Of a stretch of DNA of 64,000 nucleotides, positions 298 to 10,210 are shown piece after piece. Under the pieces are notes generated by a model. It ran no database searches, was not told the DNA's origin, and was given only the letters and a program-made list of their open reading frames with translations. The position numbers and the translations under genes are program-made. Numbering within the stretch: the stretch's first letter is position 1; every line of letters starts with the position of its first letter. The stretch covers positions 1 to 64,000 of IMG/VR virus record IMGVR_UViG_3300030673_000004; one strand, given 5' to 3'.

Positions 298-352
298 AAC
301 TCCTTGTTGAGGTGACAAGAACAAATATACATTAATTTTGTATGTTTGTCAA
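298..352 (-). promoter_or_regulatory. repeated sigma70 promoter-leader-SD cassette, copy 1
   Basis: Minus strand TTGACA(352-347)-17 nt-TATATT(329-324)-short stem-AAGGAG; 55 bp identical to 8694-8748. Confidence 0.85.
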
Positions 353-364
353 CACAATAAGTAG

Positions 365-391
365 AAAAATAGGGCTGGAGGCAGCCCTATT
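365..391 (-). terminator. intrinsic terminator after glycosyltransferase
   Basis: AATAGGGCTG/CAGCCCTATT stem followed by a T run on the minus strand. Confidence 0.7.
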
Positions 392-398
392 AGAATAG

Positions 399-1529
399 TT
401 ACTTCAACCAATCATACCAAGTAGCAGCAGACTCCGCGACATACTGCCTAAGCGTAGCTCTATTTGTAGATACGTTGTTGAACGGATTCTCTAGAGCATC
501 CCCAATAGCCTCTACAATACTAAAAACAGATGTAGGGTCTGCAGTACCTTCTGTTGCAAACGGTACCTCGGTAGATGTTACAATAGGGGTCCCGGCACGA
601 AGAGCATCAGCACTAACTAGATTAAATGTCTCCGTAAAGGATACTTGAAGAGAAACATCCATCTGCGCTAGAACCGCAAGAAAATCCTCAGAACTGCACC
701 AAGGTATCTCAATAAGCTCGGCATCTGACAGAGGATCAAAGAAGGAGCGCAAATTCTTTAACGTGTTCAAACCAGACATCTCAATGCGACCAGCGTTAAT
801 ATAAAACTTTAGATATTTTCCCTGTTGATGCGCATAAGCATAAGCAGCGATAGCCTGAGTTAACTGGTTCTTCAAAGGACGAATAGCACCAAAGCACCCA
901 ATACTTAAAGTATCTTCCAAATCCAGAGTACGCTCATCTGGTAATTCCTTCAAATTAACAGGGTAGCTATTAGGCAAAAAAGCTACCAAGGAAGGATCAA
1001 AACCTTGACCTAGTGCAAAGATAGATAAATCCGCAGAGTTACGAGGACTATTACCAGCTACATAAACACCACGAGCTAAATAGCCAGATGTCCATGCCAG
1101 AGCGATTCCTTCCCCAGCTAAAAATGCAATCTCTGAGTGACAGCGCACAACCCACGTTACACCAGGATGCAACTGCTTCAAAATATCAAATTTCTCGGGC
1201 ACAACCCAATAACCCTCAATGAAAACATGGGTTGCTTGGAACTGAGATACTTCACGATCTATGTCATTATTATCAGTAACAACAATAACCTTAGTAGCGG
1301 CACCATGCGCTGTAAGCATATCAGCAACATAGCCAGCAGAGTGCCACATACCAGTAGCAACTGTCTTTTCATGAAAGTTAGAAAGATCTACACTATAGTC
1401 TTCCCTACGCTTCAGAATAAACAGAGCACGAACATTCCGCAAGGATTTCGTGTCAACAGGTTTATGCTCATGGTGACTATGTCCATAGCCAACAGCAGCA
1501 CGAATATGATTAACTAAACGACTAAGCAT
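399..1529 (-). CDS. GT-B (GT4-like) glycosyltransferase
   Basis: GCFGAIRPLKNQ and SFTETFNLVSADALRAGTPIVTS (E-x7-D nucleotide-sugar motif). Confidence 0.75.
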   Translation of the reverse strand: MLSRLVNHIRAAVGYGHSHHEHKPVDTKSLRNVRALFILKRREDYSVDLSNFHEKTVATGMWHSAGYVADMLTAHGAATKVIVVTDNNDIDREVSQFQATHVFIEGYWVVPEKFDILKQLHPGVTWVVRCHSEIAFLAGEGIALAWTSGYLARGVYVAGNSPRNSADLSIFALGQGFDPSLVAFLPNSYPVNLKELPDERTLDLEDTLSIGCFGAIRPLKNQLTQAIAAYAYAHQQGKYLKFYINAGRIEMSGLNTLKNLRSFFDPLSDAELIEIPWCSSEDFLAVLAQMDVSLQVSFTETFNLVSADALRAGTPIVTSTEVPFATEGTADPTSVFSIVEAIGDALENPFNNVSTNRATLRQYVAESAATWYDWLK

Positions 1530-1530
1530 G

Positions 1531-1572
1531 GTAAAACTCCCTTAGGAAAACAGTTCCTAAAAGAAGTTTTAC
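1531..1572 (-). promoter_or_regulatory. hairpin occluding the SD of the glycosyltransferase gene
   Basis: GTAAAACTTCTTTTAGGAA-CTGTT-TTCCTAAGGGAGTTTTAC ends 1 nt before the ATG. Confidence 0.6.
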
Positions 1573-1630
1573 TACTCATGCTAGCTTAAAACAGGTTAAC
1601 GTATTAAAAATACGTTAAGTTTTGTTAGTT

Positions 1631-2089
1631 TCAAAAGCTACCAGGAAATAGCTGATGCACACGTGGATTAAACTGACGGTATGTAACAAAAGCGTCACGA
1701 ACACCAGGCCAAAGACTCGGATCAAAGCCGGGAACACTTTTGTCCTCAAAAATAAGATTGTAGTAAAACTTTATATCAAAGCATCCGGTTTTTGTATTAG
1801 GCACTTCAGGATTTTCGTTGAAGTACTTAATATCTATATCATGTTCGCGAAACAGCTTGAAATACGCTGCATAGTCTTTAGGATGACAGCAGCTATACAG
1901 AATGATACACACCTCAGGAAGATGGGATATTACCTGCAACGGTTGAATGGCCACGGAATACAAAGAGTGAGATACATGCAGATAATCACTATCGGCAACA
2001 GTGCCATGTATATCTAAGGCTAAGTACATCCGGCCAAATGATTTCAAATTAAATTGATCATAAGCATGCCGAATAGATTCAAAACTCAC
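1631..2089 (-). CDS. HAD-superfamily hydrolase-like protein
   Basis: N-terminal LALDIHGTV (degenerate DxDGT), ILYSC, FEDK. Confidence 0.6.
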   Translation of the reverse strand: MSFESIRHAYDQFNLKSFGRMYLALDIHGTVADSDYLHVSHSLYSVAIQPLQVISHLPEVCIILYSCCHPKDYAAYFKLFREHDIDIKYFNENPEVPNTKTGCFDIKFYYNLIFEDKSVPGFDPSLWPGVRDAFVTYRQFNPRVHQLFPGSF

Positions 2090-2526
2090 GGCGTGCCACC
2101 AAGATCTGTGATATGCTTTGCTTCGGATAAAGCATTGTCCAGAGAACGCTTAGCTGCTGCTGTATGATCGCATGTAGCTTGAACGCTGGTTGCCATCTTT
2201 GCCATCTGGGCTTGCTGAGCAGCGTTAGCCGCATATTCTGACATCTTACTGCGGGCCGCTCGAATACGGGCGTCATCTAAGACAAGGGAACCACCAAAGG
2301 GAATAGAGCTAATACCACTGATACCTGGAGTCGGTGTAGAACTTGTAGCCTGAAGCAATTCATTTTGCAATGAATCAACAACAGCCTCAACAGAATCTGC
2401 CTCCAACAAAGCAATAGCAGCCTTTTGCTCATCCGTTGGACCAAAGCAGCTACGGATATTATCCAGACCATAACCACTGAGAATCAAGGCACCAAAAGCA
2501 CCGCAAACCTGTTTCTTCCAATCCAT
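2086..2526 (-). CDS. hypothetical protein
   Basis: 146-aa ORF with GGGG SD; stop overlaps the next start. Confidence 0.55.
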   Translation of the reverse strand: MDWKKQVCGAFGALILSGYGLDNIRSCFGPTDEQKAAIALLEADSVEAVVDSLQNELLQATSSTPTPGISGISSIPFGGSLVLDDARIRAARSKMSEYAANAAQQAQMAKMATSVQATCDHTAAAKRSLDNALSEAKHITDLGGTP

Positions 2527-2545
2527 TTTGAAAACCCCCTAAGGA

Positions 2546-2754
2546 TCAAAAAAGCACAATGTCTTTCAAAATAGTATCCTTACTATCTGTAAGAGACAAC
2601 TTACTACCAGGCGTTTCAGCTAATGTAGTTGATAGTACCTTATACGTAAAGATAGATCGCTTAATCATCTCTGACCAGAGATCCCGCGAGATACCGCCAA
2701 AGTACTCAGGAACTCCTCTATCTTAGGTGCAAGCTCAACTGTGTACTGGGACAT
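2546..2754 (-). pseudogene. small ribbon-helix-helix-like protein with a 1-nt frameshift near 2676
   Basis: MSQYTVELAPKIEEFLSTLAVSRGIS continues in another frame as SEMIKRSIFTYKVL...ILKDIVLF*; fills the gap between neighbours and is absent from the ORF track. Confidence 0.5.
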
Positions 2755-2756
2755 AG

Positions 2757-3773
2757 TTAGACCTCATGAGTAAAACAGGAACGGTAGTTTCTCAATTCAT
2801 CAGCAGCATGCTGGATATAAAGATCATCCAGCCAATCGGACCAAAACGTATAATCAGGCGCAGGCAGATTGTTTGGAATCTCACGAACTCGAAGAATCTC
2901 ATCAGCAATCCACGCCTCAATGAATGGCCGGGACCACTCATTAGCACGAACGCGAAGCAACTCAGCACGACGAGGAGATGGGAGAGTAATACGCCCCGTC
3001 GTCAGATACTCCTCAAGTTCCCACACAACACGAAGAGCATGGTAATAAGCTTTAAGATCCGTTCCATCAGCAGCGGCTGCAGCTTTTGCACGGTCCCCGA
3101 AAGCATTCAATTTATTCACAAGAATAGGATACACTTCAGCCAAACTACGTCCCAGGGGGAAGGCACAATCAGGACCATACAGGTACATCTCACCAGCCTG
3201 AGCACCACGACGAGGTTCTACCGAGAAATGAGTCAGCCCCTCAAAGACACCTGTGTCAACAAACGACTTGAGTTTAAGGTTCACGTGATCACCTTGCGTG
3301 AACGAACCTGTATAAGACAAACAAGCATCCTGCACATGAAGCAATTCGTTGTACTTTTCACCCTTAGCAGAATACTTAGCGGCCTGACCTCGACAGTAAC
3401 CAATGAAGGGCATTACGATATTCGTCTGCAGCTTTTCACGATGCTCTAAAATGTAGTCCCACACAAAAGACGTGAAGATCAGACACGACTTTGGAGCATG
3501 CAGCAACTCCAGAACATAAGTCTGGCCACCAAGAGCCTGTTTGATGAAATGCCGCAAATCATAACACTTATCGTCCACGTCTGACGCGGTATTCTTCGTC
3601 GCCTTATTCGTGCCGTCTTCACGAGCAGGTACATACAAGTGATTAATCAACCGGCGCGAGTCTGCCATGAAGATATTGACAAAATCCGTGTCACTCTCAG
3701 GTGTGTTAGTTCCAAACAAGCGGGATCCGAAGATTACCTTTGAGATAGTACGGCCAAGAGGTAAGTTTTCCAC
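2757..3773 (-). CDS. DNA polymerase beta-superfamily nucleotidyltransferase (T4 NrdC.11/RlaP-like)
   Basis: FGSRLFGTNTPESDTD (GS...DxD) and DLKAYYHALRV; GTG start after the cassette SD. Confidence 0.8.
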   Translation of the reverse strand: MENLPLGRTISKVIFGSRLFGTNTPESDTDFVNIFMADSRRLINHLYVPAREDGTNKATKNTASDVDDKCYDLRHFIKQALGGQTYVLELLHAPKSCLIFTSFVWDYILEHREKLQTNIVMPFIGYCRGQAAKYSAKGEKYNELLHVQDACLSYTGSFTQGDHVNLKLKSFVDTGVFEGLTHFSVEPRRGAQAGEMYLYGPDCAFPLGRSLAEVYPILVNKLNAFGDRAKAAAAADGTDLKAYYHALRVVWELEEYLTTGRITLPSPRRAELLRVRANEWSRPFIEAWIADEILRVREIPNNLPAPDYTFWSDWLDDLYIQHAADELRNYRSCFTHEV

Positions 3774-3780
3774 GAAGTGC

Positions 3781-3832
3781 TCCTTGTTGAGGTGACAAGG
3801 AACAATATACATTAATTATGCTTAGCTGTCAA
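3781..3832 (-). promoter_or_regulatory. repeated sigma70 promoter-leader cassette, diverged copy
   Basis: TTGACA(3832-3827)-17-TATATT(3809-3804) with the same CTTGTCACCTCAACAAGGAG leader. Confidence 0.8.
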
Positions 3833-4048
3833 GTCTTTGCGCTTACCATACAAAGAAATTATAGTATCAAACTGAGCAAGCATATCCTCGTCAGGAATGA
3901 ATCCCGAAGCATCACGATTATTTATCAGATAGTAATCAGGCATACGAAAAGTTAAACAGCGCTTCGTATGATATCTGACTAACAAATGCTGCTGATATTC
4001 ATAAATTGTCTGTGACTGATCAAGACTTCTGTGAGAATCTCGTGTTAC
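3812..4048 (-). pseudogene. coaE: detached 3' end of the dephospho-CoA kinase domain
   Basis: Start-less frame VTRDSHRSLDQSQTIYEYQ...PDYYLINN...*; joins RRVVT at 6219 in frame when the insertion is removed. Confidence 0.7.
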
Positions 4049-4241
4049 TTCAACAAGGCTTCGATTTCGGGTGGCACGTCTTTGTTTTCGGGATTATTTT
4101 CCGCCATCCACCCTGGCCTGTGCTCTGCCACCCACGCAGGATGTATGCAGCCAGCCACTCGGGCTTGAATTTTACCATCCACTCGGGATTGTTCTTGGCT
4201 AAGATCATGCACTGCTTCTCGGTCAAATCACTGATTTTCAT
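4045..4241 (-). pseudogene. cargo gene with 8-aa P-x-W repeats and a 1-nt frameshift near 4142
   Basis: NNPEWMVKFKPEWLAAY continues in another frame as HPAWVAEHRPGWMAENNP...EALLK*; AGGAG SD upstream. Confidence 0.55.
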
Positions 4242-4345
4242 GGTCTTATTCTCCTGTGTTACTTGTCTGTGTTCTCATGTACGTTGTGTAAACTCAGCAC
4301 ATTCTTAATATAATCAAACATTAACTTTTGTCACTACTTCTTTGC

Positions 4346-4915
4346 ATGAAGATTAAACTTAGTACTTACGCAAAGAATAACGGCATCCACTATCAGACAG
4401 CTTGGCGGTGGTTTCAGAAAGGTTTAATTCCGGGTGCTACTCAAGCACCAACAGGTACTGTCTTCATAGAAGAGCCAGCAACAGCAACAGCATTAAAGCC
4501 TGTAGTTGTTTGTTACTGTCGGGTATCTAATCAAAGTAGGCGTAAGGAGCTACAGTATCAAGTAGATAGGTGTCTCTCTTATTGCGCTGCTAAAGGCTAC
4601 GCTGTTGATAAAGTGTTCAAAGAAGTTGCTTCCGGCATGAATGACAACCGAAAAGAACTATGGGCAGCTATCAATGCAGAACCAACTATAATTGTGGTTG
4701 AGAATAAAGATCGACTTACTAGATTTGGTTTTAATTACATAGAAAAGTTACTTCTCCCTAAATGTACTATCGAAGTTATATCTCCAGCACAGACAGATGA
4801 ACAAGACCTAATCAAAGATATGATTTCTGTAGTCACATCCTTCTGTTGTCGATTATATGGCTTGCGTAGAGCAAAAAATAAAGTTAATGCTGTAAAAGAA
4901 GCTCTTGAGTTATGA
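4346..4915 (+). CDS. tnpA: IS607 serine-recombinase transposase
   Basis: N-terminal MerR-like HTH (GIHYQTAWRWF), YCRVS catalytic Ser, VVENKDRLTRFG, SFCCRLYGLR. Confidence 0.93.
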   Translation: MKIKLSTYAKNNGIHYQTAWRWFQKGLIPGATQAPTGTVFIEEPATATALKPVVVCYCRVSNQSRRKELQYQVDRCLSYCAAKGYAVDKVFKEVASGMNDNRKELWAAINAEPTIIVVENKDRLTRFGFNYIEKLLLPKCTIEVISPAQTDEQDLIKDMISVVTSFCCRLYGLRRAKNKVNAVKEALEL

Positions 4916-6189
4916 CTTCATTTATTCGCACAAGTCAGCATAGCTTAAAAGACCTTAATAAATGTAAAGCATATGAGCTAAACCTGTTTATCCGTGCTTA
5001 CAGAGAAGCTGTAAATGTTTATGTTGATTTTCTGTGGAATACTAGAATTGAATTTAATACTACTGTTCTTGATGTAAAAGAACATCAGTACAATGTACCA
5101 AAGTTTATACCTAAGCTACTAGAAAATTTTAATACGCTACTAACGTCTAGGGCGTTGAAGTGTGCCTCTACGCAGGCTTGTGGGGTAGTTGCCTCTGTTT
5201 TAGATAAAAGACAGAAAGATGAGAGTAAATTAGAGTGGTTTTATTCTCAAGGTAAAAAGCCATCAGCCGCACTAATTGAAAGATTATCGAAACCACCTGT
5301 ATGTCCTAACACACAAAATATAAACTGCGAACTGAATAGTATTATAGTCAGTGTTGGTGCAGAAATTAATAGTTTTGATTTATGGCTTAATTTTTCAGCG
5401 TTGTTCAAAAGTAAACGAGGTTTTAAGCTGGCTGTGCCCGCTAGGCATCATAGGCAATCTCGGAAATGGCAGGCAAGAGGAAAGTTACTTACATCTATTC
5501 TTTTGAATGAGCACCAATTTAATCTACGTTGGGACGTTGAAGAGCCTAAGAAGCGTACTTCTGGTACTATCGTAGGTGTAGATCAAGGGATTACGGATTT
5601 ATTAACAATATCAAATAATCAAGAGTTTCCAATAGACATTCATGGGTACACACTTACCTCTATTTTGCATAAGATAGCTAGAAAACGTAAAGGGTCTCTA
5701 GCCTTTGCTGCTGCCCAGCAGCACAGAAAGAATTATATTAATTGGTATGTCAAGAAACTTGATTTAGCTGATGTAAAAGAGGTAAAACTCGAAAAGATAA
5801 CAAATATAGGCTACAGAAGAACATCCAGTAGATTTCTTCGTGGCTTTACAAATACGTTGATTAGAGATTCACTAGAACGCCTATGTTTGGAAAGCGGTGT
5901 CCGTTTTTCGCTCATTGACAATGAATTCAATAGTCAACGTTGCAATAAATGCGGTTGGACACAGAAGAGTAATAGAAAAGGTAAGTTGTTTCTTTGTAAA
6001 AACTGTAAGCATGAAGCAGATGCTGATGTAAATGCTTCATGTAACATTTTAATCAGGGATAGCTTAATTCTACTACCTTTTGGGTTCCGTGCTAAAAAGT
6101 TAAACATTAACGGGTTCTTTTGGACTCAAGAACATGTTGCTTTGAAGTACGGGGAAGAGCTTACAGTCCTTCTTAACCGAGAAACTTAA
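4912..6189 (+). CDS. tnpB: TnpB RNA-guided RuvC nuclease
   Basis: RuvC-I VGVDQG, RuvC-II KLEK, Zn ribbon CNKCG..CKNC, RuvC-III DADVNASCNI; ATGA overlap with tnpA. Confidence 0.9.
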   Translation: MTSFIRTSQHSLKDLNKCKAYELNLFIRAYREAVNVYVDFLWNTRIEFNTTVLDVKEHQYNVPKFIPKLLENFNTLLTSRALKCASTQACGVVASVLDKRQKDESKLEWFYSQGKKPSAALIERLSKPPVCPNTQNINCELNSIIVSVGAEINSFDLWLNFSALFKSKRGFKLAVPARHHRQSRKWQARGKLLTSILLNEHQFNLRWDVEEPKKRTSGTIVGVDQGITDLLTISNNQEFPIDIHGYTLTSILHKIARKRKGSLAFAAAQQHRKNYINWYVKKLDLADVKEVKLEKITNIGYRRTSSRFLRGFTNTLIRDSLERLCLESGVRFSLIDNEFNSQRCNKCGWTQKSNRKGKLFLCKNCKHEADADVNASCNILIRDSLILLPFGFRAKKLNINGFFWTQEHVALKYGEELTVLLNRET

Positions 6190-6240
6190 AGTTTATAAAT
6201 ACTTATACTTTAAGTAACTGTTACAACACGTCGCATACAA
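6100..6240 (+). ncRNA. putative TnpB omega RNA (boundaries approximate)
   Basis: Inferred from position at the tnpB 3' end and element right end; hairpin TTAAAGT...ACTTTAA at 6186-6213. Confidence 0.4.
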
Positions 6241-7337
6241 GAGTTCATACTTTCACCGGACTCAACACAAAACCGAAGAGAACAACGATTCCACACAGAG
6301 GGCACGGAAACCATTGGTACCATCTCAAGAATCGTCGGTACATCCGAAACAACACGATCTAAAGCAGATAGCAGAAAAGGTAAGTTCATCGTATTAAACT
6401 TATTCAGCACTTTCCATGGATTGTACCAAGCACCACGAGTAAACAACAAGGAGGTCATTGCTTCAGAATTGTACGAGCCATTAGGAGCAAGAACAGAAAT
6501 ACCATACGGCTCAAAAAAGGCGCAAAGAGCGTCTTTATATGAATCCAACGGACGAACGTACTCTTTGAATACATAATCCGCGCTCACGTATACATAGCCA
6601 CAAGTACTAGCAACTAATCTGGCAAAGTAACTCTTACCGCTGCCAATAGTACCAAAAACTCCAAGGAGATTACGGCAAGTAGCGAGTGACATACCAAATA
6701 AACGAAGTTGCCTAATAGCAGAGCTTGAAATATACGAAAGTTCGGGTGAGCTCACAAAAAAAGTATAAGGCAAAGTCTTTTCTGCTAAGTCAAAAACAAA
6801 CTGCCGCTGCACAAGTTCAGACTTTAGATCCCCTACATCGCGCAAGCCGCGTATAATACTGACTTGATACGAAGGTATAGAGGAGTAATGCTGAAAAACA
6901 TCTGCAAGAGTACCTCTGAACTTAACAGTTTCATAAGACGAGGGAACACCAGGAATAGAAAAAGGGAAAACAGAGAATCCCGATGAAAAAACAGACGAAG
7001 CATTAAGTTTATCTGGATTCTGTCCAATAGCAACAATCACCTTATCAAAAGCATGAGTTGCTTGCTTCACGATATCCAAATGACCTTTATGAAAAGGATT
7101 AAATGAACCAGCGTAGATACCGACACGAAGTGTTTTCTTCTTTAAGCATGCCTCATACGCATCAATTCGTTTGCTATGCTGTCCTTGAAGCAGAGCACGA
7201 ACCAACGAAATATGTCCAGAAACAAACTCAGCATAAGGAAGAAAAGAATACTCAGCATAAATTTTATCGCTATACGATAGTAGGTCCGGAAGATCAGACT
7301 GCAAGACAGAACGATCATACTTATTAAACTTATGCAC
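6210..7337 (-). pseudogene. coaD: HD C-terminal half + phosphopantetheine adenylyltransferase + dephospho-CoA kinase N-terminal part, truncated by IS607
   Basis: YAGSFNPFHKGHLDI, IIRGLR, YISSSAIR (CoaD); GVFGTIGSGKS..SAD (CoaE P-loop). Confidence 0.8.
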
Positions 7338-7362
7338 ATAGGAAGGTGTATCCGGTGTTGCA

Positions 7363-7749
7363 TTAACAAGCTTCGAGCTCGGTCACAAGATCTTGCAAAT
7401 AAGCAGGGACATAGGCATCATTTTCCTTTGACATCTGCTGCATCAGAGCAACAGACGCCTCCTCGTTGTCATTCCGACGAGGATCATAAACTACATCATG
7501 AAACAGGGCTGCCCAGTACATGGCAGTACGAACACACTCAGTAAACATCTGAGTATCCGGTGAGTTTATCTGATCCGCAATGGAATACACGTGTTCCATT
7601 GTATGAAAATGACGATGAGGCTGCGCGTAAGCCTCCTTAAAAAAGGAGCGCCATGCTGGCAGCGCATTCACATAATCAAAAACAAAGTGCTCAGAAGCCA
7701 GGACAAACCTTTCAGCTAGACACACTAAATATACATTAATTTTGTACAC
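7363..7749 (-). pseudogene. HD phosphohydrolase N-terminal half, out of frame with 6210..7337 (start uncertain)
   Basis: YAQPHRHFHTMEH, AALFHDVVYDP, NEEAS motifs. Confidence 0.7.
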
Positions 7750-7756
7750 GTGTCAG
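7728..7756 (-). promoter_or_regulatory. sigma70-type promoter
   Basis: CTGACA-17-TATATT with the AAAATTAATG spacer shared with the cassette. Confidence 0.6.
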
Positions 7757-8047
7757 CTAAGCAGGGAAATTAGCAAAAATAATCTGATCAAATTCTGGTG
7801 TCATTCGCTTAATCTTACCAAGGGATACTGCTCTCCAAGCGTCTCTTAGAGCATACGCATAAGGACTTTGATCGTTGTCCATAAAAGCTTTTTCACAAAG
7901 AATCCGATACAACGGATGGATCCCGATGTCAGACTTAAGCATATCCTCAAACCCAAAGTGCTTAATGAGTATTAGCTCTGCAGCGCTAATTTGCGTACCG
8001 TACCGCATAGTATCACATCCCCAAGTAATCATAAGCAAGCGTGTCAT
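7757..8047 (-). CDS. hypothetical protein
   Basis: ORF packed in a minus-strand gene run. Confidence 0.5.
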   Translation of the reverse strand: MTRLLMITWGCDTMRYGTQISAAELILIKHFGFEDMLKSDIGIHPLYRILCEKAFMDNDQSPYAYALRDAWRAVSLGKIKRMTPEFDQIIFANFPA

Positions 8048-8252
8048 TAATCAGATCTTGGGCAATCCTCACCCAGTTCTCCTTCGTTACTTGTTGAGGC
8101 AGTGCATCGCAGCACACCCGAACTAAGCCATTGCGGAGAAGCTCTTTCTGGGCATAGGCAAAAGCCTTTGCCTTATAGTCTACAGGAGCACTGAGATTAA
8201 CAGACATATCAGGCTTCTTGCGAGTCAAGCGAGAAAGATCAAACAATTCCAT
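8013..8252 (-). CDS. hypothetical protein
   Basis: AAGGAG SD, 79 aa. Confidence 0.55.
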   Translation of the reverse strand: MELFDLSRLTRKKPDMSVNLSAPVDYKAKAFAYAQKELLRNGLVRVCCDALPQQVTKENWVRIAQDLINDTLAYDYLGM

Positions 8253-8264
8253 AGCAAAAACTCC

Positions 8265-8690
8265 TTAGAAAATGGTTTCAATACCCAAAGACTCTTTGGT
8301 TTGCCAATCAGGTTCTGTGATTCCTGAAAGCAAAACAAGCTTTTGACGAATATTGTTATTCCGGGAGAACGAACTCGATACAGGGATAAGATAAGTAGGA
8401 CGGCGATCTTCACTGAGATCAGCCAAATAGTCCAACACAGAATCAAATCCGCCGTCAAGATACACAAGGTCATACTTCTGCATCCCCAAAGCCTTCTGAG
8501 CTGCAAAAATGTCACAAGCGATATCTACAGTGTATGAACCATGCTTCTGTAGAAGCAACGATTCAAGCTTAGCATACTCGCCCTCGAACGAGTAACTCCC
8601 TTTAATTCGGAGATAATGAATACCACCAAAAGAACCCTCATCCTGACACATATTAGCATCGTCATCAATGATCAAAATCTTAAAAGGCAT
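8265..8690 (-). CDS. stand-alone receiver (REC-like) domain protein
   Basis: KILIIDDD ... KYDLVYLD; start moved to ATG at 8690. Confidence 0.6.
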   Translation of the reverse strand: MPFKILIIDDDANMCQDEGSFGGIHYLRIKGSYSFEGEYAKLESLLLQKHGSYTVDIACDIFAAQKALGMQKYDLVYLDGGFDSVLDYLADLSEDRRPTYLIPVSSSFSRNNNIRQKLVLLSGITEPDWQTKESLGIETIF

Positions 8691-8693
8691 TGG

Positions 8694-8748
8694 AACTCCT
8701 TGTTGAGGTGACAAGAACAAATATACATTAATTTTGTATGTTTGTCAA
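8694..8748 (-). promoter_or_regulatory. repeated sigma70 promoter-leader-SD cassette, copy 2
   Basis: Identical to 298-352. Confidence 0.85.
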
Positions 8749-9907: not shown

Positions 9908-9914
9908 ACCAACA

Positions 9915-9943
9915 AATATACATTAATCTTGTATATTTGTCAA
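9915..9943 (-). promoter_or_regulatory. sigma70 promoter; predicted leaderless cca mRNA
   Basis: TTGACA-17-TATATT-7 nt-ATG(9907). Confidence 0.75.
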
Positions 9944-10210
9944 CTATAATACACCATGTGCGTGTATCACATAAAACAGCAGCGAACAAAATCCTGTGAA
10001 CAAAAAACAAAGAAACAAAACAAAAGTGATGACTAGAGAGAACGCATTATCGCCATGAACACAAGCGGTAAACAATTCAATCTCGGTAGCATCCTGTGAA
10101 GGAAACTCATTAAGATCATCCGAGGAGTGATAGCGTTGACAAATTGTGCCTATACAAAGCAACAGAAAAACAAAGCTAGCAGCACCCGAAAGAATAGTAA
10201 AAAATTGCAT
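9944..10210 (-). CDS. small two-TM membrane protein
   Basis: Two hydrophobic segments. Confidence 0.5.
   Translation of the reverse strand: MQFFTILSGAASFVFLLLCIGTICQRYHSSDDLNEFPSQDATEIELFTACVHGDNAFSLVITFVLFLCFLFTGFCSLLFYVIHAHGVL

What the first reader, a model, noticed from the sequence alone, without database searches (positions are those of the whole stretch)
4042..6224. IS607/TnpB element appears to have captured a passenger gene between repeated cores
Seen: the insertion in coaE is bounded by TGTTAC at 4043-4048 and 6219-6224, and deleting 2176 bp restores RRVVT-RDSH. GTGTTACTT occurs at both 4042-4050 and 4256-4264, bracketing a 214-bp unit that holds one small gene with its SD; its corrected stop codon lies inside the outer core. 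The right end read inward (GTTACTTAAA) mirrors the outer left end (GTTACTTCAA). Inference: the original left end is near 4260, and the serine transposase used a look-alike site 214 bp further out, carrying a neighbouring gene along. Alternatively the 214-bp unit is a cassette that TnpA can integrate or excise.
Basis: partly seen in the sequence, partly recalled or inferred. Interest (0 to 1): 0.7.

Follow-up and report, generated by a model that had tools for sequence, protein, structure and literature searches.

The report
IS607 element carrying captured flanking DNA
A small jumping gene (IS607 family, with a TnpB nuclease) has landed in a giant phage's coenzyme-A gene and brought 240 bases of another phage-like genome with it, including a now broken small gene; this is a natural case of a serine-recombinase transposon picking up neighbouring DNA.

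Summary
A 2176-bp insert splits the CoaE part of a CoaD-CoaE gene in a 375-kb phage. A related phage carries the intact CoaE, colinear across the break.

Related IS copies in several contexts give ends GT|GTxAA...AACT|GT. That places the IS proper at 4286-6221, not at about 4260.

The extra 240 bp (4046-4285) is foreign: its GC is 0.50, against 0.37 for the IS and 0.43 for the phage. Public metagenomes show two of the expected states:
- the same IS, 100% identical, without the 240 bp (freshwater runs);
- the 240-bp sequence without the IS, running straight through 4256-4290 (wastewater runs).

The inner GTGTTACTT is therefore donor sequence, not an old IS end.

The small gene belongs to an unnamed phage family with RPxWMAxN octapeptide repeats. 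This copy is frameshifted.

Best model: the IS sat beside this gene in a donor phage or prophage. TnpA then joined the right end to a look-alike GT site (GT-TACTTCAA) 242 bp outside the true left end, and the larger circle integrated at a GT in coaE. The donor intermediate was not seen.

This is a new variant of a known kind and of moderate interest.

The parts
6225..7337 (-). N-terminal 371 codons of the interrupted CoaD (PPAT)-CoaE fusion gene. As it stands, the ORF runs on into the IS right end and stops at 6210.
   Evidence: Pfam CTP_transf_like and CoaE. Residues 216-371 are 78% identical to residues 1-156 of the intact CoaE P0170.
3812..4048 (-). Severed C-terminal 78 codons of CoaE.
   Evidence: 73% identical to P0170 residues 157-233 and contiguous with the N part. 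Flanking DNA is colinear with the empty site of related phage L048.
4044..4045 (+). Left crossover dinucleotide GT of the 2176-bp composite. It lies inside TGTTAC (4043-4048) and GTGTTACTT (4042-4050). The following TACTTCAA mimics an IS end motif (pseudo left end).
   Evidence: Sequence. The frame of the restored CoaE fixes the exchange inside TGTTAC. The family right end finishes in AACT-GT. Donor-type contigs become alike from 4042.
4046..4285 (.). 240-bp captured (transduced) donor segment. It holds one small gene with its SD and about 45 bp of its upstream region.
   Evidence: GC 0.50 against 0.37 for the IS and 0.43 for the phage. Absent from 100%-identical IS copies in runs X5 and X9. 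Present without the IS in wastewater runs X12, X21, X23 and in X22.
4045..4241 (-). Passenger small gene, frameshifted. The N-terminal 33 codons are in the frame of ATG 4241 (4143-4241). The C-terminal 32 codons plus TAA are in the other frame (4045-4143). The open frames as they stand are 4050-4241 (63 aa) and 4045-4212 (55 aa).
   Evidence: HMMER finds 47 relatives for the N-terminal part. Both halves align to full-length family members and to the phage's own paralog. A wastewater homolog reads ..KPEWMAKY-NPENKDVPPEIEALLK* in the second frame.
4256..4264 (+). Inner GTGTTACTT. It is part of the small gene's 5' UTR in the donor and is not an IS end.
   Evidence: IS-less contigs span it without a break: X12 4237-4290, X23 4200-4290, X21 4212-4266 and 4225-4273.
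4286..6221 (+). IS607-family insertion sequence proper (1936 bp counting GT at both ends). Left end GT-GTAAACTC.., right end ..AAGTAACT-GT.
   Evidence: A relative seen in 3 contexts has ends GTGTCAAATC...TTTAACTGT. The L036 relative has GTGTAATTTC...CTAACTGT. Spacing from the left end to the tnpA ATG is 60 nt, and from the tnpB stop to the right end 32 nt, against 61 and 34 in the relative. X5 and X9 copies are alike from 4283.
4346..4915 (+). tnpA, a serine transposase of 189 aa. The N-terminal 59 residues precede the catalytic domain.
   Evidence: Pfam Resolvase on residues 60-190 of the 195-aa ORF that starts at TTG 4328, i.e. 54-184 of the 189-aa protein. 3791 homologs, the best non-self at 65% identity.
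4912..6189 (+). tnpB, an RNA-guided nuclease homolog of 425 aa. Its start overlaps the tnpA stop (ATGA).
   Evidence: Pfam Cas12f1-like_TNB. 50% identical TnpB genes in viral contigs.
6219..6224 (+). Right-junction TGTTAC. GT at 6220-6221 is the right crossover dinucleotide, and TAC at 6222-6224 is coaE sequence. GTTACTT (reverse complement of 6212-6218) is the terminal right-end motif.
   Evidence: Sequence. Flanks vary after AACTGT in relatives and in the ~88% variant of this IS.

Best explanation
The insert is a normal IS607-family insertion sequence (tnpA serine transposase plus tnpB, 4286-6221) that uses GT as its crossover dinucleotide. On its left side it carries 240 bp (4046-4285) from its previous home.

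Proposed history:
1. The IS inserted at a GT just upstream of a small octapeptide-repeat gene in a donor genome, most likely another phage or a prophage with GC near 50%. The target was ..GTACGTT-GT-GTACGTTGTGG...
2. In one excision, TnpA paired the true right end (..AAGTAACT-GT) with a look-alike site 242 bp further out (GT-TACTTCAA, at the stop codon of the small gene) instead of the true left end. That site shares GTTACTT with the terminal right-end motif. The result was a 2176-bp circle with junction ..AACT-GT-TACTTCAA...
3. This circle integrated at a GT in coaE of the jumbo phage (..CTCGT-GT-TACAACACG..). There was no target duplication. The result is the TGTTAC seen at both junctions.

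Shown: the IS ends, the empty site, the foreign nature of the 240 bp, the two separate states (IS alone, unit alone), the family and frameshift of the passenger.
Inferred: the donor intermediate, the use of the pseudo-end by TnpA, and GT as the exchanged pair.
For: - IS identity: Pfam Resolvase and the TnpB TNB domain.
- IS boundaries: one relative in three different contexts and a second relative give GT|GTxAA at the left end and AACT|GT at the right end, with variable flanks. The ~88% variant of this IS has GTGTTAACTTCA.. and ..TTTAACTGT|AAC.
- The same IS without the unit: in X5 and X9, pieces of 4462-5703 have 0 differences, likeness starts at 4283, and an unrelated flank lies before it in two studies.
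- The unit without the IS: X12 4237-4290 (0 differences) and X23 4200-4290 (1 difference) run on as CGTTGTGGTGTGTTATATGCC. Likeness on the other side starts at 4042, preceded by the start codon and SD of another paralog.
- Composition: 0.50, 0.37 and 0.43 for unit, IS and phage.
- Empty coaE in related phage L048.
- IS607-family TnpA is known to exchange at a 2-bp core shared by both ends and the target, via a circle and without a target duplication (PMC6188088; bioRxiv 10.1101/2023.11.20.567912).
Against: - The donor intermediate (unit-IS-GTACGTTGTGG) was not found in any collection.
- All 'native' evidence rests on short Logan contigs of 50-250 bp.
- In the Clostridium botulinum IStron (CboIStron), efficient excision needs about 40 bp of the left end with several motifs. 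The pseudo-end has only one motif, and its register differs by 2 nt from the true left end.
- The sequences fit a two-step cassette or recombination route equally well.
- Only one such composite is known.
- No raw reads were available to look for circle junctions.
Confidence: 0.6

Rival explanations
1. Two separate events in the phage. The plain IS first inserted at the GT in coaE. Later the 240-bp segment was placed between coaE and the left end. This could have happened by TnpA integrating a small circle cut out of the donor at two GT look-alike sites. It could also have happened by homologous recombination with an IS copy in a co-infecting donor, plus an illegitimate join at GTGT.
For: The junction sequences are equally compatible: GT at 4044-45, 4286-87 and 6220-21. 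GTTACTT motifs sit at 4044 and 4258. The identical IS and the donor sequence occur together in wastewater run X12.
Against: It needs two crossovers at non-IS sites, or a double recombination with one illegitimate join. A circle of about 240 bp is a poor substrate. No phage copy with the IS but without the unit was seen among 10 contigs.
Confidence: 0.2
2. The 240 bp is an original part of this IS, a long left end with an accessory gene. The shorter copies in freshwater runs would then be truncated derivatives.
For: The TGTTAC hexamer bounds the whole 2176 bp, and the outer end mimics the right-end motif.
Against: The unit occurs without the IS in several metagenomes and continues into unrelated sequence exactly at the left end. 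Three related IS have their left end 60-62 nt upstream of tnpA. GC differs by 13 points. The gene family is a phage family also present as a native paralog at 144 kb in this phage.
Confidence: 0.04
3. Assembly chimera or chance repeats with no biological link between the IS and the unit.
For: The 9-mer pair alone is only weakly significant in a 64-kb window.
Against: Window 4000-6300 is letter-identical in ENA, JGI and Logan assemblies of several samples, with 10 contigs in all. Reading-frame restoration is exact against an intact ortholog.
Confidence: 0.02

Closest known systems
IS607 family insertion sequences (IS607, IS1535, CboIStron): serine transposase TnpA plus TnpB
   Same: - tnpA with the catalytic domain C-terminal to a DNA-binding part.
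- tnpB overlapping and downstream of tnpA.
- No terminal inverted repeats and no target duplication.
- The same dinucleotide at both ends and in the target.
- Short repeated motifs in both ends.
   Different: - The core appears to be GT rather than the GG of IS607 and CboIStron.
- This copy is 240 bp longer on the left because it carries foreign flanking DNA.
- It sits in a jumbo phage gene.
Flank capture by alternative end use in other IS families (ISEcp1 of the IS1380 family with alternative right ends; one-ended IS91/ISCR elements). Named from my own knowledge, not tested here.
   Same: An element moves together with adjacent DNA because the transposase uses a look-alike site beyond its normal end. 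The captured DNA is contiguous with the normal end.
   Different: Those are DDE or rolling-circle (HUH) enzymes, and they usually read past the right or downstream end. Here a serine recombinase would exchange at a 2-bp core, and the left side is extended. I found no description of this for IS607 in the paper library.
Phage small-protein family with RPxWMAxN octapeptide repeats (unnamed; no Pfam or PHROG family)
   Same: The passenger shares three features with the family: the N-terminus MKIxDLTxxQ, the PxW[ML] repeats, and the C-terminal DVPxEIxxLL motif.
   Different: The copy in the window is broken by a frameshift after codon 33. It has only about four repeats, where relatives have 2 to 26.

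Membership tests
IS607 family | Serine recombinase TnpA with the DNA-binding domain N-terminal and the catalytic domain C-terminal | tested here: met
   Pfam Resolvase covers residues 60-190 of the 195-aa ORF, leaving about 59 N-terminal residues for the DNA-binding part. There are thousands of homologs of the same length.
IS607 family | tnpB (RuvC-type RNA-guided nuclease) immediately downstream of tnpA | tested here: met
   425-aa ORF at 4912-6189 overlapping the tnpA stop. Pfam Cas12f1-like_TNB, E = 1.2e-13.
IS607 family | No terminal inverted repeats and no target-site duplication; an identical core dinucleotide at both ends and in the target | tested here: met
   GT lies at 4286-87 and at 6220-21, and also at 4044-45 for the composite. 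The relative in 3 contexts is flanked only by GT. Removal of the insert plus one GT restores coaE exactly.
IS607 family | Short repeated motifs in both ends that bind TnpA | tested here: inconclusive
   TAAACT/TTACTT-like 7-8-mers are shared by the left end (4287, 4321) and the reverse complement of the right end (6197, 6218). Binding was not tested.
IS607 family | Transposition through an excised circle | not testable with these tools
   Only Logan contigs were available, no raw reads. No joints were reported.
TnpB-omega RNA system | Omega RNA encoded at the tnpB 3' end and right end, with its guide read from the right flank | tested here: inconclusive
   No Rfam family matched 3800-6500 at E <= 1 apart from two chance snoRNA hits. 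No model of my own was built.
Flank-transducing IS (functional class) | The captured DNA exists elsewhere without the IS, and the IS exists elsewhere without it | tested here: met
   Unit alone: X12, X21, X23, X22. IS alone: X5, X9.
Flank-transducing IS (functional class) | A donor locus with the IS next to the captured DNA and the donor's own right flank | tested here: not met
   No such contig turned up in the viral, metagenome or genome collections or in the laid runs. Absence from short contigs is weak evidence.

The most novel reading that the evidence does not exclude
IS607-type serine transposases can routinely use any GT that is followed by a single end-like heptamer (GTTACTT) as a substitute left end. 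The three such sites here (4044, 4258, 4286) would then define alternative excisable units. This would be a general route by which minimal TnpB-bearing IS acquire cargo and shuttle small genes between phages.
Probability: 0.15. Interest if true: 0.7.

Novelty: new variant of a known kind. Interest (0 to 1): 0.45.

Why it matters
- IS607 elements are regarded as minimal and cargo-free, with almost no target specificity beyond a dinucleotide. A natural copy that dragged along neighbouring DNA suggests their end choice is loose enough to capture genes. That bears on how TnpB-carrying elements grow into cargo transposons.
- It also shows a route for gene flow between phages. A 375-kb phage received a gene of a phage-typical family from a different genome through an IS.
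- The case is well suited to a simple excision assay, because all three candidate left crossover sites lie within 250 bp.
- Its weight is limited. It is a single event, and the passenger gene is broken.

Tried and rejected
Searches that found nothing useful:
- blastn of the insert against 50,697 phage records: no match.
- Exact left-end pattern in viral contigs: none.
- The same kind of pattern in JGI metagenome contigs: only the phage itself.
- Donor right-flank pattern in viral contigs: none.
- Small-gene N-terminal DNA pattern in genome contigs: none.
- Word-index protein search with the 63-aa ORF: only itself.
- The search for related loci with the 63-aa ORF in viral contigs: no relatives. 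Two further calls failed for query length or conservation.
- PDB phmmer with the 78-aa C-terminal peptide alone: nothing meaningful. This was superseded by the intact ortholog P0170.
- Rfam: no omega RNA family.
- Pfam and PHROGs on the small-protein family: nothing above noise.
- tblastn of the joined CoaD-CoaE against viral loci L010-L030: only the CoaD half was covered.

Readings rejected:
- The inner GTGTTACTT as the old left end.
- TA as the crossover pair. I considered it at first, but the relatives' ends favour GT.
- A second IS copy in the genome: none by DNA or protein.

The X6 'joint' 4311>7490 with GGAG between is an 18+18-nt low-likeness match, and I take it as spurious.
Full report
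SETTING. The window is the first 64 kb of a 375,537-bp virus record with direct terminal repeats, that is, a jumbo phage. The runs that hold it fully are peat metagenomes. The region of the finding holds these minus-strand genes: an RlaP-like nucleotidyltransferase (2757-3812) and a gene with a cytidylyltransferase (CoaD/PPAT-like) domain followed by a CoaE (dephospho-CoA kinase) domain (6210-7337). Between them, on the plus strand, lie a serine-recombinase gene (Pfam Resolvase) and a tnpB gene (Pfam Cas12f1-like TNB domain).

THE OBSERVATION.
- TGTTAC at 4043-4048 and 6219-6224;
- GTGTTACTT at 4042-4050 and 4256-4264;
- GTTACTTCAA at 4044-4053, with its near mirror as the reverse complement of 6209-6218.

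Deleting 2176 bp fuses 6225-7337 to 3812-4048 in frame. The last protein search found P0170, an intact 234-aa CoaE on a 52-kb ENA contig. Its residues 1-156 match the window's residues 216-371 at 78% identity. Its residues 157-233 match the severed peptide at 73%. There is no gap at the junction. The contig (L048) is a syntenic relative of this phage with the gene order NT5C, PolyA polymerase, CoaE, RlaP. Its DNA is 76-81% identical on both sides of the site, and it has neither the IS nor the small gene. The insertion and the empty allele are therefore established. The same insertion, letter for letter over 4000-6300, is present in ENA, JGI and Logan assemblies from several samples, 10 contigs in all. 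It is the only copy of the IS in the genome.

WHERE THE IS REALLY ENDS. The closest non-identical TnpA (P0002, 65% identity) lies on seven short contigs that represent three different insertion contexts. In all of them the common sequence begins at GTGTCAAATC, 61 nt before the tnpA ATG. It ends at TTTATTTAACTGT, 34 nt after the tnpB stop. The flanks are unrelated immediately outside. A second relative (P0003, L036) has GTGTAATTTC at the left and CTAACTGT at the right. The window has GTGTAAACTC at 4286, 60 nt before the ATG at 4346, and AAGTAACTGT ending at 6221, 32 nt after the tnpB stop.

An IS variant about 88% identical to the window's, seen in freshwater and wastewater runs, has GTGTTAACTTCA at the left and TTTAACTGT followed by AAC at the right.

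For IS607-family elements it is established that TnpA exchanges strands at a 2-bp core that is identical at both ends and in the target. The reaction goes through a circle and makes no target duplication. The core is GG for IS607 and for the Clostridium botulinum IStron (PMC6188088; bioRxiv 10.1101/2023.11.20.567912). By the same logic the core of this subfamily is GT, and the IS proper is 4286-6221. This is an inference from comparison, good to about 3 nt.

THREE STATES IN PUBLIC DATA. Contigs of public runs were laid on the region, with these results.
(a) IS without the unit. Two freshwater metagenomes from different studies (X5, X9) hold pieces of the IS with zero differences (4462-5703 in X5) but hardly any phage flank. 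In both, a contig becomes alike at 4283 after the same unrelated sequence ..CATCCTTGCTT. The same IS therefore exists elsewhere without the 240 bp.
(b) Unit without the IS. Wastewater metagenomes X12, X21 and X23, and a run labelled only 'organism B' (X22), hold short contigs that match parts of 4042-4290 with few or no differences. X12 matches 4237-4290 with 0 differences, and X23 matches 4200-4290 with 1. Both then continue as CGTTGTGGTGTGTTATATGCC instead of the IS. At the other side, likeness begins at 4042. In X12 it is preceded by CATGGTCTTGTTCTCCTG.., the start codon and Shine-Dalgarno sequence of another paralogous small gene. In its home the gene therefore sits in a tandem array.
(c) The composite. 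It was seen only in the phage.

The IS-less sequence and the IS share only GTTGTGTA (4283-4290). That is where the IS once entered the donor: target ..GTACGTT-GT-GTACGTT.., IS ..AACT-GT-GTAAAC... The inner GTGTTACTT (4256-4264) is spanned by IS-less contigs, so it is donor sequence (the 5' UTR of the small gene) and not a former IS end.

Base composition agrees: 0.50 for the unit, 0.37 for the IS and 0.43 for the phage.

THE PASSENGER. HMMER with the first 33 residues found 47 relatives among 1.84 billion representatives. They share three features:
- an N-terminus MKIxDLTxEQ;
- a variable number of octapeptide repeats of the form RPxWMAxN;
- a C-terminal motif DVPxEIxxLL.

Neither Pfam nor PHROGs knows the family. 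Members lie in rows of small co-oriented genes on phage-like contigs and on IMG/VR viral contigs of 13-69 kb. They carry 2 to 26 repeats, and two paralogs sit in tandem in L050. The jumbo phage has its own intact 61-aa paralog at genome position 143,995-144,180, with GC 0.37.

In the window the N-terminal 33 codons are in one frame and the last 32 codons, including the C-terminal motif and the TAA at 4045-4047, are in another. Read with an X at the break, the gene aligns over its full length to the family. A wastewater homolog reads ..KPEWMAKY-NPENKDVPPEIEALLK* in the second frame. The passenger is thus a frameshifted copy in every assembly. No phage promoter repeat lies upstream of it.

MECHANISM. 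The simplest history has two ordinary steps and one aberrant step.
1. Ordinary: the IS inserted at the GT upstream of the small gene in a donor genome.
2. Aberrant: in one excision the right end recombined with GT 4044-45 instead of the true left end GT at 4286-87. GT 4044-45 is followed by TACTTCAA. Together they read GTTACTT, the same heptamer that forms the terminal motif of the right end on the other strand (6212-6218) and that resembles the left-end motifs GTAAACT and TTAACTT.
3. Ordinary: the resulting 2176-bp circle (..AACT-GT-TACTTCAA..) integrated at GT in coaE (..CTCGT-GT-TACAACACG..).

This reproduces both junctions exactly. The hexamer TGTTAC arises because the target and the circle junction happen to share T before the core and TAC after it. 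The first insertion shows a similar 6-bp identity (T-GT-GTA). That may hint at a target preference beyond the core, as seen for the TGGG target of the Clostridium botulinum IStron. Two cases prove nothing, though.

WEAK POINTS.
- The donor intermediate was not found.
- The native contexts rest on contigs of 50-250 bp.
- Experiments on a relative show that about 40 bp of left end with several motifs are needed for efficient excision. A single-motif pseudo-end should therefore be rare.
- The register of the pseudo-end differs by 2 nt from the true left end.

A two-step route fits the sequences equally well but needs more unusual events. In that route the IS first inserts in coaE, and the unit is inserted later at the left-end junction, as a TnpA-made circle or by recombination with a donor IS copy. 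I give it 0.2. That the 240 bp is an original part of the IS is practically excluded.

COMPARISON AND NOVELTY. The element is a member of the IS607 family by all features testable here. Carrying flanking DNA through use of a substitute end is well known for other IS families: ISEcp1, and IS91/ISCR (named from my own knowledge). I found no report of it for IS607 in the searched papers. I therefore rate it a new variant of a known kind.

Interest is moderate. The three-state evidence is clean and the case is easy to test.

Noticed in passing
window 298-352, 3780-3834, 8694-8748, 9911-9946; also genome positions near 143957, 145304, 247735, 248745, 267980, 286907, 371644, 372607: A conserved element of about 55 bp that, read on the gene strand, is TTGACA-17 nt-TATATT followed by a fixed leader ending in AAGGAG. 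It looks like a sigma-70-type promoter with its leader. It has at least 11 copies in the genome, and copies in the related phage L048 and in other metagenome contigs.
   Followed up: partly
genome (G000:C1) 143995-144180, plus strand; outside the window: The phage's own intact 61-aa member of the RPxWMAxN octapeptide-repeat family (MKITELTDAQCKKIAQHNPDWMAKNRPAWIAENRPYWMAKHCPEVMAKYTFDVPADILKYL). The family has no Pfam or PHROG entry, is widespread on phage contigs, and carries 2 to 26 repeats.
   Followed up: partly
window 6693-7950 compared with L048 5996-6001: In this phage a CoaD/PPAT-like domain is fused in front of CoaE, and a 128-aa gene follows. The related phage L048 has a stand-alone CoaE at the same place and a separate cytidylyltransferase-like gene elsewhere (L048 579-1181).
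   Followed up: no
left flank of the IS copy in runs X5 and X9 (before window 4283) and L036 3420-3440: Two different IS of this subfamily (65% TnpA identity) both have TTGCTTGTT just outside their GTGTAA left end, in otherwise unlike flanks. It may be a target or TAM-like preference, a homologous target gene, or chance.
   Followed up: no
runs X5, X9, X21 laid on window 4306-4839 and 5873-6192: A variant of the IS about 87-90% identical co-occurs with the identical copy in freshwater and wastewater metagenomes. It has its own left end (GTGTTAACTTCATTAACTCCC) and right end (..CTTTATTTAACTGT).
   Followed up: partly
L033 (Logan contig, equal to window 323-8722): An 8.4-kb Logan contig present in 4 samples ends on both sides inside the promoter-like repeat (298-352 and 8694-8748). 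This shows that the repeats break short-read assemblies of this phage.
   Followed up: no
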